Positions 21,081 to 33,147 of a DNA stretch of 64,000 nucleotides are shown here, in pieces. The stretch covers positions 62,001 to 126,000 of IMG/VR virus record IMGVR_UViG_3300023181_000025. One strand, 5' to 3'. The position numbers and the translations under genes were made by a program. Numbering within the stretch: position 1 is the stretch's first letter; each line of letters opens with the position of its first letter. Below the pieces are notes generated by a model that made no database searches, was not told where the DNA came from, and saw only the letters and a list, made by a program, of their open reading frames with translations.

Positions 21081-21083
21081 CAT

Positions 21084-21168
21084 GGAGTATTATGTAAACT
21101 GGTGTTTACGGTTGCTTGGAAAGCAACAGGCCGTTAGTTCGGCAAGGGTTCAATTCCTTAATGCTCCG
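21084..21168 (+). tRNA. tRNA-Ser(GGA)
   Basis: GTTGC-TTGGAAA-GCAAC, long variable arm. Confidence 0.88.
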
Positions 21169-29898: not shown

Positions 29899-29972
29899 GC
29901 GCCGTTAGCTCAGCGGTTAGAGCGGTCCGACTCTAAATTGGATTGTCGGGGTTTCGAATACCTCACGGCGCA
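29899..29972 (+). tRNA. amber suppressor tRNA (anticodon CTA)
   Basis: GCGCCGT/ACGGCGC, canonical D/T arms, TCCGA-CTCTAAA-TTGGA. Confidence 0.88.
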
Positions 29973-30185
29973 CTTTTGACTTAAAAGAAAACATGGTGAC
30001 TAAATGATTATTGTCATGGTTAAGCTAGAAAATACTGCTAGCAGATTATTTAGAGTGATGCGATAGCTTAGCAAGCTGAGATTATTCAAGGGTTGACAAC
30101 AGTTGCCTGATAATCTCAAATATCTAAAGAAAGTTAAAATATTTTCACTTTTTTCTTCCAAAATCTAAACTTTTAGTGTAAATAT

Positions 30186-30362
30186 ATGAAGCCAAAAATG
30201 ATTACAAGAGTTACAGCAACAGAATTTGAAACCGATGATGGAGTTATCCATGATATTCCGTTTGAATTAGATGAAGTTCCAACAGTTGAGGATTTTCAAC
30301 GAATCTATGACGAATGGTTCAGATTATTTCAACAGAAAGGATTGATAGACAAAAATGGATAA
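30186..30362 (+). CDS. 58-aa acidic protein at IS left end (absent from ORF track)
   Basis: MKPKMITRVTATEFETDDG...; stop overlaps tnpA start. Confidence 0.6.
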   Translation: MKPKMITRVTATEFETDDGVIHDIPFELDEVPTVEDFQRIYDEWFRLFQQKGLIDKNG

Positions 30363-30987
30363 AAAGATTCTATCAATTAGTGATGCTGCATCTATCTTAG
30401 GCGTTTCTGATGAAACTCTTAGAAATTGGGAAAGAGAAGGCAAAGTGATCCCATTTCATACGGAAGGTGGCCATAGACGCTATTATAGAACCGATATTGA
30501 GAAGTTGGCAGGAATCTATGTAGAAACTGTTAAAGAGTCTAGTGGTAAGCGTGTGGGTATCTATTGCCGTGTTAGCTCACATGAGCAGAAGACCAAAGGT
30601 GATTTAGAAAGACAGGTTGGCAGAATGACTACAGAGGCACTAAAACGTGGTTATTCTATTGTTGCGGTTTTTGATGAGGTAGGTTCAGGAATGAACGACA
30701 ATAGGAAGAAATTACAGAAACTTTTTGAATTGGTTGAGAAGAAAGAAATTGATGTAGTCTTAATCGAACATAAAGATAGATTGTCAAGGTTTTGTTTTAA
30801 TTATCTATTATCTTATTTTAATTCCTATGGGGTTAGAATTGAAAAAGTTGAAGAGGTAATGAGTAAGAGTTTCGAGAATGAACTCGTAGAAGATATTTTG
30901 TCTTTGATGGCTAGTTTTTCTGCTAAAATCTATGGACGTAGAAGTTCGCAGAATCGAAAGAAGAAAGAAAAGGAGGAACCAGAATGA
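30355..30987 (+). CDS. tnpA: IS607 serine-recombinase transposase
   Basis: MerR HTH (TLRNWE.EGK, GGHRRY), YCRVSS..QK.DL.RQ, KDRLSRF, ELVED, FSAKIYGRRS. Confidence 0.95.
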   Translation: MDKKILSISDAASILGVSDETLRNWEREGKVIPFHTEGGHRRYYRTDIEKLAGIYVETVKESSGKRVGIYCRVSSHEQKTKGDLERQVGRMTTEALKRGYSIVAVFDEVGSGMNDNRKKLQKLFELVEKKEIDVVLIEHKDRLSRFCFNYLLSYFNSYGVRIEKVEEVMSKSFENELVEDILSLMASFSAKIYGRRSSQNRKKKEKEEPE

Positions 30988-31691
30988 GACAGGAAATTTT
31001 ATATGGCGACTGTTTAGAGCTATTAAAAAACATTCCTGATAAATCAATTGATTTCATTTGTATTGACCCGCCATACGGTTTAACCGCTCCGAAATGGGAT
31101 TCTATTGTTTCTTTTGATTTTTTATGGGCTGAATTTAATAGAATTGGCAAAAATGGATATGTCGCGGCTATATTTGGCTGTCAACCATTCACTACGAAAG
31201 TTATTTGCTCTAATATAGAACAATTTAAATATTGTTGGTATTGGAATAAAAACCAAGGAACAAATTTCTTTCATGCCAAGAGAATGCCAATTAGAAAAGT
31301 TGAAGAAATATCTATTTTTGGCGGCAAAACATATAATCCACAAATTACGGATGGGCATATTCCTACCAATTCTGCTAAAGGCTGCTCCAACGGAAAAGCA
31401 TATCATGGAACCAATACGCGAAATTACGAAGGTGGGAAAACAACGCGATTTCCTGACAATATTTTAAATTTTAAATGCGTGGATAATTATTCGAGAGTTC
31501 ATTCCAGTCAAAAACCAGTTGAGCTTTTGGAGTATCTTATCAATACATATACTAATGAGAATGATGTTGTTTTGGATAGCTTTGCTGGTTCAGGCTCAAC
31601 TTTAGTAGCGGCAAAAAATCTCAATCGTCAATTCATAGGTATCGAAAAAGAAAAAGAATATTATTATATTTGTTTAGAAAGATTGAAATGA
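30984..31691 (+). CDS. N6-adenine/N4-cytosine DNA methyltransferase (beta class)
   Basis: DPPY precedes H..QKP..LL and VLDSFAGSGST. Confidence 0.92.
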   Translation: MRQEILYGDCLELLKNIPDKSIDFICIDPPYGLTAPKWDSIVSFDFLWAEFNRIGKNGYVAAIFGCQPFTTKVICSNIEQFKYCWYWNKNQGTNFFHAKRMPIRKVEEISIFGGKTYNPQITDGHIPTNSAKGCSNGKAYHGTNTRNYEGGKTTRFPDNILNFKCVDNYSRVHSSQKPVELLEYLINTYTNENDVVLDSFAGSGSTLVAAKNLNRQFIGIEKEKEYYYICLERLK

Positions 31692-32908
31692 TTTTACGCG
31701 CATACAAAACCGAGATTAGTGTTAATAACAAGCAACAAACCTTGTTATTGCAACATATCGGTTGTGCAAGATGGGCATATAATTGGGCATTAGCTAAAAA
31801 GAAAGAACAATTCGATAAAAAAGAAAAGATTCCTAATGCTATTGAACTTCATAGGGAATTAAACAAGTTAAAACAGTCGGAAGTTCCTTGGATGTATAAT
31901 TCAAGTAAGACTTCTCCACAAAATGCACTTAGAGATTGCGATAAGGCATTTCAAAATTTTTTCGCTCGTTGTAAGAGAAAAGTCAAAGGCAAGAAAGGAT
32001 TTCCTAAATTTAAATCCAAAAAGAACGAAAAACAGTCGTTTAGATTAGACGGAGCAATTTCAGTAGAGTCTGATTGTATTAAATTGCCACGAATCGGTAA
32101 ACTTAGATTAGCCGAGAAAGATTATATTCCCACTGATTGTAAAATACTATCTGCTACCGTCTCTAAACGAGCGGACAAATGGTTTATATCTATTCAAGTA
32201 GAAACGCCTGACAGAGAGCATCTTGACGCTAAGAACGAGGTAGTAGGAATTGATTTGGGAATTAAAACTTTGGCTACTTGTTCTGATGGAGCCATTTATG
32301 AAAATCCAAAAGCCTTAAAGAAAAATCTTAAAAGACTAAAACGTAAACAAAAACAATTAAGCAGAAAGAACAAGGGAATCAAAAACTATGGAAAAGTAAA
32401 ACAAAAATTAGCAAAATTACATTATCACATATCAAACATTCGTAAAGATTGCTTACATAAAATCACTTCTAAAATTATAGACGAAAACCAAGTCGTAGTT
32501 TTGGAAGATTTGAAAGTAAGCAATATGATGAAAAATCACTGTTTGGCGCAAGCTATCAGTGATGTTGGATTATTTGAATTTCGTCGTCAGATAGAATATA
32601 AAGCAAAATGGAATGGAAGAAAAGTTATCTTCGCGGATACCTTCTTTGCTTCCAGTAAGACTTGTAGCTGTTGCGGATGGAAAAATTCAGATTTGAAGTT
32701 GACAGATAGAATATTTGACTGTAAGATGTGTGATAATAAAATGGATAGAGATTTAAATGCAAGTTTGAATCTAAAACAAATTTATAGGGAAAGTTCTTCC
32801 CGAATTGACGCTTCTGGAGATGGGAGTTCATCAAACGCAAGTTTGGTTAGCCCGTCGTTGAACGAAGAATTTAACAAAAAATCGAGAGTTTATGTCCTAA
32901 AAAGATGA
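31688..32908 (+). CDS. tnpB: RNA-guided endonuclease TnpB
   Basis: RuvC GIDLG / VLEDL / DRDLNA intact; SSKTCSCCG...C..C zinc ribbon. Confidence 0.95.
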   Translation: MILRAYKTEISVNNKQQTLLLQHIGCARWAYNWALAKKKEQFDKKEKIPNAIELHRELNKLKQSEVPWMYNSSKTSPQNALRDCDKAFQNFFARCKRKVKGKKGFPKFKSKKNEKQSFRLDGAISVESDCIKLPRIGKLRLAEKDYIPTDCKILSATVSKRADKWFISIQVETPDREHLDAKNEVVGIDLGIKTLATCSDGAIYENPKALKKNLKRLKRKQKQLSRKNKGIKNYGKVKQKLAKLHYHISNIRKDCLHKITSKIIDENQVVVLEDLKVSNMMKNHCLAQAISDVGLFEFRRQIEYKAKWNGRKVIFADTFFASSKTCSCCGWKNSDLKLTDRIFDCKMCDNKMDRDLNASLNLKQIYRESSSRIDASGDGSSSNASLVSPSLNEEFNKKSRVYVLKR

Positions 32909-33147
32909 CTTTAGATTTTTGTAAGTTTAAAAGAACGGTGTTAAGTAAATTTTCTTGAGAATCGTTTAAGTTAAAATTTTATAAAAACATGAAGAAGAAA
33001 ACGGTAATTATAACTGATCCAAAAGAAATTACCCGCATTTGTTTAAATCAGCCAGCGGTTTCTGGTGAACGAATGAAGCAATCAATAATTTCACAAAACA
33101 AAAAAAATAAAATGAATACACATACGTAGGTTGAATTAAAAGAAGCA

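What the first reader, a model, noticed from the sequence alone, without database searches (positions are those of the whole stretch)
30103..32938. IS607 element carrying a DNA methyltransferase between tnpA and tnpB, with the phage late-type motif inside
Seen: 58-aa ORF, tnpA, beta-class MTase and intact TnpB all overlap at stop/start codons; AGTGTAA sits 5 nt before the first ATG. Known: IS607 elements are usually just tnpA-tnpB. Inference: cargo MTase gives anti-restriction benefit or modulates TnpB self-targeting, and the element is adapted to phage transcription. The predicted guide starts TGTTAAGTAAATTTTC after the right end; the TAM would be near ACAG.
Basis: partly seen in the sequence, partly recalled or inferred. 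Interest (0 to 1): 0.65.

Follow-up and report, generated by a model that had tools for sequence, protein, structure and literature searches.

The report
IS607 transposon carrying a methyltransferase
An intact jumping gene of the IS607 type in a giant phage carries a DNA methyltransferase as cargo, and belongs to a clade, not found described, whose members carry from one up to five such enzymes.

Summary
Window 30090-32938 is a complete 2,849-bp IS607-family element. It has orf58, tnpA (serine recombinase), a beta-class N6-adenine DNA methyltransferase (MTase) and tnpB, all joined by overlapping start/stop codons, plus a covariation-supported guide RNA at the 3' end.

Comparison with about 170 related loci fixes the ends. 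The left end starts at GGGTTGACAACAGTT (30090, not 30103). The right end stops at ...AACGG (32938). The predicted guide start is right. The proposed TAM 'ACAG' is not: ACAG lies in a conserved left-end palindrome, and the TAM is most likely the GGG at the left junction.

The MTase is true cargo. Elements with the same ends carry MTases at 10 or more unrelated insertion sites. All 13 cargo-bearing elements form one TnpA clade nested among cargo-less orf58-tnpA-tnpB elements. Their backbones are 80-100% identical, but the cargo varies in family, number and position. Each beta-MTase allele has closer free-standing relatives in phage genomes than among the other elements.

The most likely role is anti-restriction cargo that benefits the phage. 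Control of TnpB is unlikely. AGTGTAA(AT) is a real gene-proximal motif of this phage, but 'late' is untested. No empty site or excision product was found. I found no published description of MTase-carrying IS607 elements.

The parts
30090..30092 (+). GGG at the left junction. It holds the GG crossover core of the serine recombinase and is the probable TAM of TnpB.
   Evidence: It is invariant in almost all aligned copies, and the sequence to its left is unrelated between loci. Tested IS607 relatives use TGGG or GGG as TAM.
30093..30185 (+). Left end. It contains the near-palindrome CAACAGTTG (30097-30105), a likely TnpA (MerR-type HTH) binding site.
   Evidence: The GGGTTGACAACAGTT motif is conserved in phage, bacterial and archaeal copies of the subfamily. 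The binding role is inferred.
30175..30181 (+). AGTGTAA motif 4 nt upstream of the orf58 ATG. It is a promoter-like or start-proximal signal shared with the host phage.
   Evidence: The window has 15 copies against 6.0 expected. In the genome, 11 of 31 copies lie within 30 nt upstream of an ORF start, against a mean of 1.8 for same-composition permutations. Three more precede tRNA genes. The motif is conserved in the close element copies.
30186..30362 (+). orf58, a small acidic protein of unknown function and a conserved first gene of this IS607 subfamily.
   Evidence: It is found upstream of tnpA in most loci with TnpA of 50% identity or more, including cyanobacterial, actinobacterial and archaeal MAGs. 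In a 30-sequence alignment G19, F37, Q38, Y41, D42 and W44 are invariant. It has no Pfam, PHROG or NCBIfam match. The predicted fold has pLDDT 86 and no PDB match.
30355..30987 (+). tnpA, the IS607-type serine recombinase. It is intact at 210 aa with the catalytic motif YCRVSSHEQ.
   Evidence: Pfam MerR + Resolvase. NCBIfam NF033518 at 193.8 bits, cut-off 110.
30984..31691 (+). Cargo: a beta-class N6-adenine DNA methyltransferase of 235 aa (DPPY ... FAGSG).
   Evidence: PF01555 at 1.6e-29. Best PDB matches are M.MboIIA, CcrM and DpnA. It is the only PF01555 hit, and the only MTase-like gene detected, in the 211-kb genome. The centre of the gene (about 31040-31530) is replaced in sister elements.
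31688..32908 (+). tnpB, an RNA-guided endonuclease of 406 aa counted from the ATG. It has RuvC D (GIDLG), E (LEDLK), D (DRDLN) and a CxxC...CxxC zinc finger.
   Evidence: Pfam HTH_OrfB_IS605, OrfB_IS605 and Cas12f1-like TNB. NCBIfam guided_TnpB at 331 bits. The catalytic residues were read from the translation.
32739..32938 (+). Guide-RNA (omegaRNA) scaffold overlapping the 3' end of tnpB. It ends at the right end ...AACGG.
   Evidence: Across 7 copies there are 32 pairs, with 98.7% of cells paired and 10 pairs showing compensatory changes. None of 500 shuffles reached this, and slid controls collapse. There is no Rfam match.
32939..32958 (+). Predicted guide, the right flank TGTTAAGTAAATTTTCTTGA.
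   Evidence: Sequence becomes unrelated between copies exactly after ...AACGG. The first 16 nt have no other match in the genome with 2 mismatches or fewer.

Best explanation
Window 30090-32938 is a complete, probably still mobile IS607-family transposon inserted between a tRNA cluster and downstream genes of a 211-kb tRNA-rich jumbo phage.

Core machinery:
- TnpA (serine recombinase) excises and inserts the element as a double-stranded circle by crossover at GG.
- TnpB, with a guide RNA transcribed across the right end, should cut the empty site (GGG + TGTTAAGTAAATTTTC...). After excision, or in a co-infecting phage that lacks the element, recombinational repair would then copy the element back.
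- orf58 is a conserved accessory gene of the subfamily, possibly a TnpA partner.

Cargo: the MTase is a passenger gene placed in a translationally coupled slot between tnpA and tnpB. The element belongs to one clade of IS607 elements that carry variable methyltransferase cargo, exchanged with the resident MTase genes of large phages by recombination in the conserved ends of the MTase genes. The most likely benefit is protection of the phage genome from host restriction enzymes, which also favours keeping the element.

Shown: anatomy, ends, co-location of the cargo within the ends at many sites, cargo turnover, guide-RNA structure.

Inferred: present activity, TAM, homing between phages, anti-restriction role, the orf58 role.
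For: - Ends and mobility: homology to 8 or more copies stops at 30090 and 32938, with unrelated flanks in each locus and GG at both ends.
- Full-length elements with cargo and both ends: WIN 2849 bp, the L005 site 2869 bp (seen on 4 contigs), L025 2890 bp, L003 3991 bp, L106 3706 bp, L008 2523 bp, L105 2688 bp.
- Cargo-less relatives: L006 2149 bp, L007 2140 bp, L087 2188 bp.
- In the TnpA tree, all 13 cargo-bearing elements form one clade (SH-aLRT 97) nested among cargo-less elements.
- In sliding windows, WIN, L005 and L025 are 80-100% identical in the backbone but only 27-65% identical in the MTase centre.
- In the MTase tree, starred branches force at least 4 switches between IS-borne and free-standing states. 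Free-standing homologues 85-88% identical sit in phage contigs without IS607 genes.
- Cargo includes PF01555, PF02086, PF05869 and PF00145 MTases, with up to 4-5 per element in L015 and L014.
- The MTase is the only one detected in this phage.
- The guide-RNA structure is supported by covariation.
- The TAM logic matches tested IS607 TnpBs.
- The same occupied junctions are present in two further samples.
Against: - No empty site, excision joint or circle junction was found. Only assembled contigs, not raw reads, could be examined.
- There is a single copy in the genome.
- The MTase specificity is unknown and the host's restriction systems are unknown, so the anti-restriction benefit is inferred only from what orphan phage MTases generally do.
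- Many relatives in the clade are decayed, with tnpA truncated by a homing endonuclease gene or tnpB truncated. The clade may therefore be losing mobility.
- The direction of MTase transfer (phage to IS or IS to phage) is not resolved.
Confidence: 0.65

Rival explanations
1. The MTase serves the element itself. Methylation of the ends, the TAM or the target would control TnpA recombination or TnpB cleavage, as Dam methylation controls IS10 and IS50 (established knowledge).
For: All four genes are tightly coupled by overlapping start/stop codons. There is precedent for methylation-controlled transposition (own knowledge). The cargo slot is stable within one clade.
Against: - Near-identical backbones, with the same left end, right end and GGG, carry beta N6A MTases of at least 4 separate clades, D12 Dam, PF05869 Dam, C5 MTases or a DruA-like protein. 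The sister clade carries nothing.
- The GGG/CCC TAM contains no adenine for an N6A enzyme.
- Guides differ at every site.
Confidence: 0.1
2. The MTase is a neutral hitch-hiker. It was dragged in by homing-endonuclease-driven or homologous recombination in an MTase-rich, hypervariable part of large phage genomes. It has no selected function, and the elements are on their way to decay.
For: LAGLIDADG endonuclease genes sit next to the MTases and truncate tnpA in L003, L014, L015-17, L028, L032 and L033. tnpB is truncated in L015, L014 and L028. A 39-bp segment from the tnpA 3' end is repeated before two MTase genes in L015. Free-standing homologues lie beside GIY-YIG and HNH endonuclease genes.
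Against: In the window, L005, L025 and L106 every gene is intact and the MTase keeps its catalytic motifs. Cargo has been gained repeatedly and consists almost always of MTases rather than random phage genes. The MTase is this phage's only one.
Confidence: 0.17
3. The window copy is a fixed, no longer mobile relic, a domesticated gene block that the phage keeps for the MTase or for TnpB.
For: There is a single copy. Identical occupied junctions occur in three samples and no empty allele was found.
Against: tnpA, tnpB, guide-RNA scaffold and both ends are intact. Copies with 86-97% identical parts sit at many different sites, which implies recent movement of the lineage.
Confidence: 0.08

Closest known systems
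IS607-family insertion sequences (IS607 of Helicobacter pylori, ISXfa1, the Clostridium botulinum IS607 IStron)
   Same: - A serine-recombinase TnpA with a MerR-type HTH, upstream of tnpB.
- GG at both ends, with no inverted repeats.
- A guide RNA across the right end.
- A G-rich junction motif (GGG) set against CGG at the right end, as in CboTnpB (TGGG versus TCGG) and ISXfa1 (GGG).
   Different: - It carries a DNA methyltransferase between tnpA and tnpB and a conserved 58-aa ORF in front of tnpA. A 2026 review still describes IS607 as encoding two proteins (PMC13565253).
- It has no group I intron.
- TnpA is under 42% identical to any IS607 in cultured phages.
- There is no Rfam (RAGATH-18) match to the guide RNA.
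Transporter IS and other small transposons with passenger genes (own knowledge of the ISfinder term 'tIS')
   Same: An otherwise IS-sized element that carries one or a few non-transposition genes inside its ends.
   Different: Here the carrier is a TnpB/guide-RNA-bearing serine-recombinase element living in phage genomes. The cargo is almost only DNA MTases, placed in translationally coupled slots and swapped between nearly identical backbones.
Free-standing homing endonuclease gene islands of T-even phages (seg and mob genes with co-conversion of neighbours)
   Same: A site-specific nuclease in a phage genome that can drive itself and linked genes into co-infecting relatives. The element sits in a tRNA region, as does T4 segB (PMC13565253).
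   Different: Target recognition would be RNA-guided (TnpB) and the unit has discrete ends and its own recombinase. Homing between phages is not shown here.
Orphan MTase arrays of large phages
   Same: The cargo MTases are 80-88% identical to free-standing phage MTases (85%, 80% and 88%). Some of those lie in tandem arrays with ATGA overlaps, such as L174 with five PF01555 genes.
   Different: Here the MTase lies inside a transposon, so it can move to new sites and new genomes as part of it.

Membership tests
IS607 family | Serine-recombinase transposase with an N-terminal MerR-like HTH and a C-terminal resolvase catalytic domain | tested here: met
   Pfam MerR/HTH_17 at residues 6-54 and Resolvase at 69-207. 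NCBIfam IS607 family transposase equivalog at 193.8 bits, cut-off 110.
IS607 family | tnpB downstream of tnpA on the same strand | tested here: met
   tnpB lies at 31688-32908 with three TnpB Pfam domains. guided_TnpB scores 331 bits, cut-off 100. The narrower IS607_TnpB 'exception' model scores 291, below its cut-off of 350.
IS607 family | Ends terminate in GG, with no terminal inverted repeats and no target-site duplication | tested here: met
   The left junction is flank|GGGTTGAC and the right end is ...AACGG|flank in all copies. Flanks show no duplication beyond the shared G(G).
IS607 family | Mobility: the same element at different sites, empty sites, a circular intermediate | tested here: inconclusive
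   The same ends occur at 10 or more unrelated sites in other phage contigs. No empty site, excision joint or circle junction was found.
IS607 family | Only two genes (tnpA, tnpB) | tested here: not met
   There are four genes. orf58 is shared with a broad subfamily and the MTase is cargo of one clade. This is a departure in content, not in transposition machinery.
TnpB RNA-guided nucleases (OMEGA) | Intact RuvC D-E-D triad and zinc finger | tested here: met
   GIDLG, LEDLK, CSCCG...CKMCD and DRDLN are present in the translation. The domain models are matched end to end.
TnpB RNA-guided nucleases (OMEGA) | Structured guide RNA overlapping the 3' end of tnpB and running into the flank | tested here: met
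   The consensus structure has 10 compensatory pairs, and none of 500 shuffles reaches the observed value. Transcription and processing were not tested.
TnpB RNA-guided nucleases (OMEGA) | TAM-dependent cleavage of the donor joint | not testable with these tools
   Only the analogy is available: GGG at the left junction against ACGG at the right end, as in CboTnpB and ISXfa1.
Beta-class N6-adenine DNA methyltransferases (PF01555) | Motif IV DPPY before motif I FxGxG, and a family profile match | tested here: met
   DPPY is at about residues 28-31 and FAGSG at about 199-203. PF01555 matches at 1.6e-29 over profile positions 1-218 of 221. PDB matches are M.MboIIA, CcrM, RsrI and DpnA.
Beta-class N6-adenine DNA methyltransferases (PF01555) | Methylation activity and recognition sequence | not testable with these tools
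   No close characterised homologue was found. The best solved structure matches at E 3.7e-18.

The most novel reading that the evidence does not exclude
One clade of IS607/TnpB transposons living in large phages acts as an RNA-guided shuttle for anti-restriction genes. It offers translationally coupled cargo slots that take up and swap DNA methyltransferases of several families from resident phage genes. TnpB-guided cutting of empty sites during co-infection then drives the whole package into related phage genomes. orf58 would be a previously unrecognised cofactor of the IS607 recombinase.
Probability: 0.3. Interest if true: 0.8.

Novelty: new variant of a known kind. Interest (0 to 1): 0.62.

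Why it matters
IS607 and IS605 elements are treated as minimal units of a transposase plus TnpB and its guide RNA. Large surveys and a 2026 review that I could read do not mention methyltransferase cargo.

A clade that carries and rapidly exchanges DNA MTases inside phage genomes links two fields: RNA-guided transposon maintenance and homing, and the phage-host restriction arms race. It suggests a route by which anti-restriction genes spread between phages.

The material is directly testable:
- three near-identical backbones (WIN, L005, L025) carry different MTase centres;
- a two-MTase element (L106) is intact;
- cargo-less sisters are available for comparison.

The widely conserved orf58 is also an unstudied component of a large IS607 subfamily found in bacteria, archaea and phages.

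Tried and rejected
- Empty site of the window insertion. Exact-pattern scans of IMG/VR found nothing. The first used the wrong junction with two Gs and the second a gapped pattern.
- Empty sites of the L005 and L003 insertions: none. None among all fetched loci either.
- Contigs of four sequencing runs. The source and two sister samples show the occupied junctions, and a fourth run holds a roughly 90% identical element in another flank. There were no skipping joints at the ends. All runs were available only as contigs, so rare excision products cannot be seen.
- Megablast of the region against GenBank phages: no match. The right-flank protein found no close relatives in IMG/VR and only distant ones (38-50% identity) in jumbo phages such as XacN1 and pT24. 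No syntenic empty site could therefore be read.
- Rfam found no guide-RNA family (RAGATH-18) at gathering or at E up to 1.
- orf58 has no Pfam, PHROG or NCBIfam match. The PADLOC scan was not run because the call failed on a bad coordinate. Homologues are all named 'hypothetical'. The Atlas returns only unnamed viral clusters. The fold has no PDB match at E 0.001 or better.
- orf58 with TnpA complex prediction gave weak support only: score 0.56, best control 0.01. At 0.60 or under, only 7 of 80 solved complexes and both of the passing mismatches fall. Partner pLDDT was at least 83 and the runs agreed in at least 95% of contacts. I do not count this as evidence of binding.
- TAG recoding. Despite the suppressor tRNA, reading TAG as sense lengthens ORFs no more than reading TGA or TAA does.
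- 'Two partial elements flanking a resident MTase' was rejected. The ends and gene order are shared by elements at unrelated sites.
Full report
**What is there**

The window is bases 62001-126000 of a 211,168-bp virus record that is judged complete. It has 37.5% G+C, 18 or more tRNA genes, UvsX, ribonucleotide reductase, DNA ligase and RNA ligase. One flanking protein has its only cultured relatives in jumbo phages such as XacN1 and pT24.

Between an amber-suppressor tRNA (29899-29973) and a gene for a PHROG-14850 protein lie four same-strand ORFs:
- orf58, 30186-30362;
- tnpA, 30355-30987;
- a methyltransferase (MTase), 30984-31691;
- tnpB, 31688-32908.

They are joined by ATGGATAA, ATGA and ATGA overlaps. 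TnpA has MerR-HTH plus Resolvase and passes the NCBIfam IS607 transposase model. The MTase matches PF01555 with DPPY before FAGSG, which is the beta-class N6-adenine order. TnpB has three TnpB domains, and the RuvC D/E/D residues and zinc finger are readable in the translation.

**Ends**

I fetched relatives of TnpB from IMG/VR and relatives of TnpA from metagenome and genome contigs.

DNA homology between the window and at least eight copies begins at 30090 (GGGTTGACAACAGTT...) and stops at 32938 (...AAAAGAACGG). The flanks are unrelated in every locus. The element is therefore 2,849 bp long.

GG at both ends, no inverted repeats and no duplication are the IS607 hallmarks. The left end holds a near-palindrome, CAACAGTTG, that is conserved even in cyanobacterial copies.

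In the two IS607 TnpBs tested by others, the TAM is TGGG or GGG next to the left end, and the right end reads TCGG. The G at -3 tells the empty site from self (bioRxiv 10.1101/2023.11.20.567912 and PMC10711439). Here the junction GGG and the right end ACGG show the same pattern. The TAM is therefore most likely (N)GGG, and the base before GGG is not conserved. This is inference by analogy.

**The guide RNA**

The last roughly 200 nt of seven copies fold into a common structure of 32 pairs. Of the cells, 98.7% are paired and 10 pairs show compensatory changes. None of 500 shuffles reaches the observed values, and sliding the partners by one column drops pairing to 54-59%.

No Rfam family matches. 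The first 16 nt of the guide have no other match in the genome with 2 mismatches or fewer.

**Is the MTase cargo?**

Yes. Elements with the same ends and an MTase between tnpA and tnpB occur at unrelated sites:
- the window;
- the L005 site, seen on four contigs;
- L025;
- L003, which also has a LAGLIDADG endonuclease gene and a broken MTase;
- L106, with a beta MTase before tnpA and a D12 MTase after it, intact at 3,706 bp;
- L008, with a PF05869 Dam.

Left-end-only cases are L015/L017, L028, L029 and L033. L105 carries a DruA-like ORF instead of an MTase. A run from another study holds a roughly 90% identical element, with the window-type MTase, in a different left flank.

Cargo-less orf58-tnpA-tnpB elements of 2,140-2,190 bp (L006, L007, L087 and others) form the sister groups. 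In a TnpA tree all 13 cargo-bearing elements make one clade (SH-aLRT 97) nested among cargo-less ones.

**Cargo turnover**

WIN, L005 and L025 are 80-100% identical along the backbone. They are only 27-65% identical across the centre of the MTase gene, about 31040-31530. This stretch lies between the DPPY region and the AdoMet-binding region, so it includes the expected specificity domain.

Each allele has closer free-standing relatives than IS-borne ones:
- proteins 85% and 80% identical to the window MTase are ordinary genes in phage contigs with Gp23, SegE and GIY-YIG neighbours;
- proteins 88% identical to the L005 MTase lie in a five-gene MTase array and next to a C5 MTase.

A tree of 58 beta MTases needs at least four switches between IS-borne and free-standing states on well-supported branches.

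Decayed relatives have piled up MTases. L015 has C5, D12, beta and Dam. L014 has C5, beta, Dam, D12 and C5. In both, a homing endonuclease gene truncates tnpA and tnpB is a stump.

**What the MTase is for**

It is the only DNA MTase I could detect in this phage. Its relatives are orphan phage MTases.

The cargo varies across four MTase families while the TAM, the ends and the guide-RNA scaffold stay constant, and the sister clade has no cargo. This fits a benefit to the carrying phage, namely protection from restriction. It argues against a specific role in controlling TnpB or TnpA, and the GGG TAM has no adenine. Activity, recognition sequence and benefit are untested.

**The motif**

AGTGTAA occurs 15 times in the window against 6.0 ± 2.2 expected. 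Genome-wide, 11 of 31 copies lie within 30 nt upstream of the first ATG of an ORF on the same strand. Same-composition permutations average 1.8. For AGTGTAAAT the figure is 8 of 10. Three more copies sit 7-14 nt before tRNA-His, tRNA-Met and tRNA-Val.

The close element copies in other phage contigs keep TTTTAGTGTAAATATAT(AT)ATG. Sister phage-borne clades keep GTGTA. Several more distant copies show an SD-like stretch before the ATG instead, and one (L111) also has TTGACA.

Nothing shows that it is 'late'.

**orf58**

It precedes tnpA in most loci with TnpA of 50% identity or more, including cyanobacteria, Actinomycetota, Thermotogota and Nanoarchaeota MAGs. It has six invariant residues and no family, name or structural match. 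The complex prediction with TnpA gave only weak support. Its function is open.

**Limits**

No empty site or excision product was found. Only contigs, not raw reads, were available. The host is unknown. One close copy lies on a short contig binned with a Lishizhenia MAG, which is weak evidence.

**Novelty**

IS607 elements in phages are known and annotated. MTase cargo in IS607 is not mentioned in the papers I could search, including a broad TnpB survey and a 2026 review that states IS607 encodes two proteins. I rate this a new variant of a known kind.

Noticed in passing
window 29899-29973: An amber-suppressor tRNA (anticodon CTA, labelled tRNA-Pyl by ARAGORN) lies 117 nt left of the element. 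TAG ends only 9 of 204 long ORFs in the genome. Reading TAG as sense does not lengthen ORFs more than other stops do.
   Followed up: partly
window 21083-21168: Rfam calls a tRNA-Sec here (52 bits, cut-off 47), directly after tRNA-Ala. ARAGORN does not list it. It may be a long-arm tRNA.
   Followed up: no
L015:270-5630 and L014:1-6060: These are decayed elements of the same clade that have become methyltransferase islands. L015 holds C5, D12, beta-N6A and Dam. L014 holds C5, beta, Dam, D12 and C5. Both have truncated tnpA and tnpB. In L015 a 39-bp piece of the tnpA 3' end is repeated before two MTase genes.
   Followed up: partly
L003:4129-5160; also L014, L015-L017, L028, L032, L033: A LAGLIDADG homing endonuclease gene (phrog_4645) is nested at the 3' end of tnpA. 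It truncates TnpA at about 168-192 aa, making one selfish element inside another.
   Followed up: partly
L010:5937-6818: An 882-bp mini-element made of 63 bp of left end fused to the last 819 bp (3' part of tnpB, guide-RNA scaffold and right end). It looks like a non-autonomous derivative that keeps the guide RNA.
   Followed up: no
L105:986-1594: A full-length element (2,688 bp, TnpA 96% identical) carries a 202-aa DruA-like ORF (PF14236, E 8e-8) in the cargo slot instead of an MTase. It lies on a 2,960-bp contig binned with a Lishizhenia MAG.
   Followed up: no
L174:3501-7762: A 98-kb phage contig has five tandem PF01555 methyltransferase genes with overlapping start/stop codons. The first is 88% identical to the L005 cargo MTase.
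   Followed up: no
window 30186-30362 and about 90 related loci: orf58 is a conserved, unnamed first gene of a broad IS607 subfamily in bacteria, archaea and phages. The predicted fold is three strands plus one helix (pLDDT 86) with no structural match.
   Followed up: partly
whole genome (G000), for example window 17042, 19477, 23854: The motif (W-rich)AGTGTAAAT sits 4-28 nt upstream of many ORF starts and 7-14 nt upstream of tRNA genes. This suggests very short leaders in this phage.
   Followed up: partly
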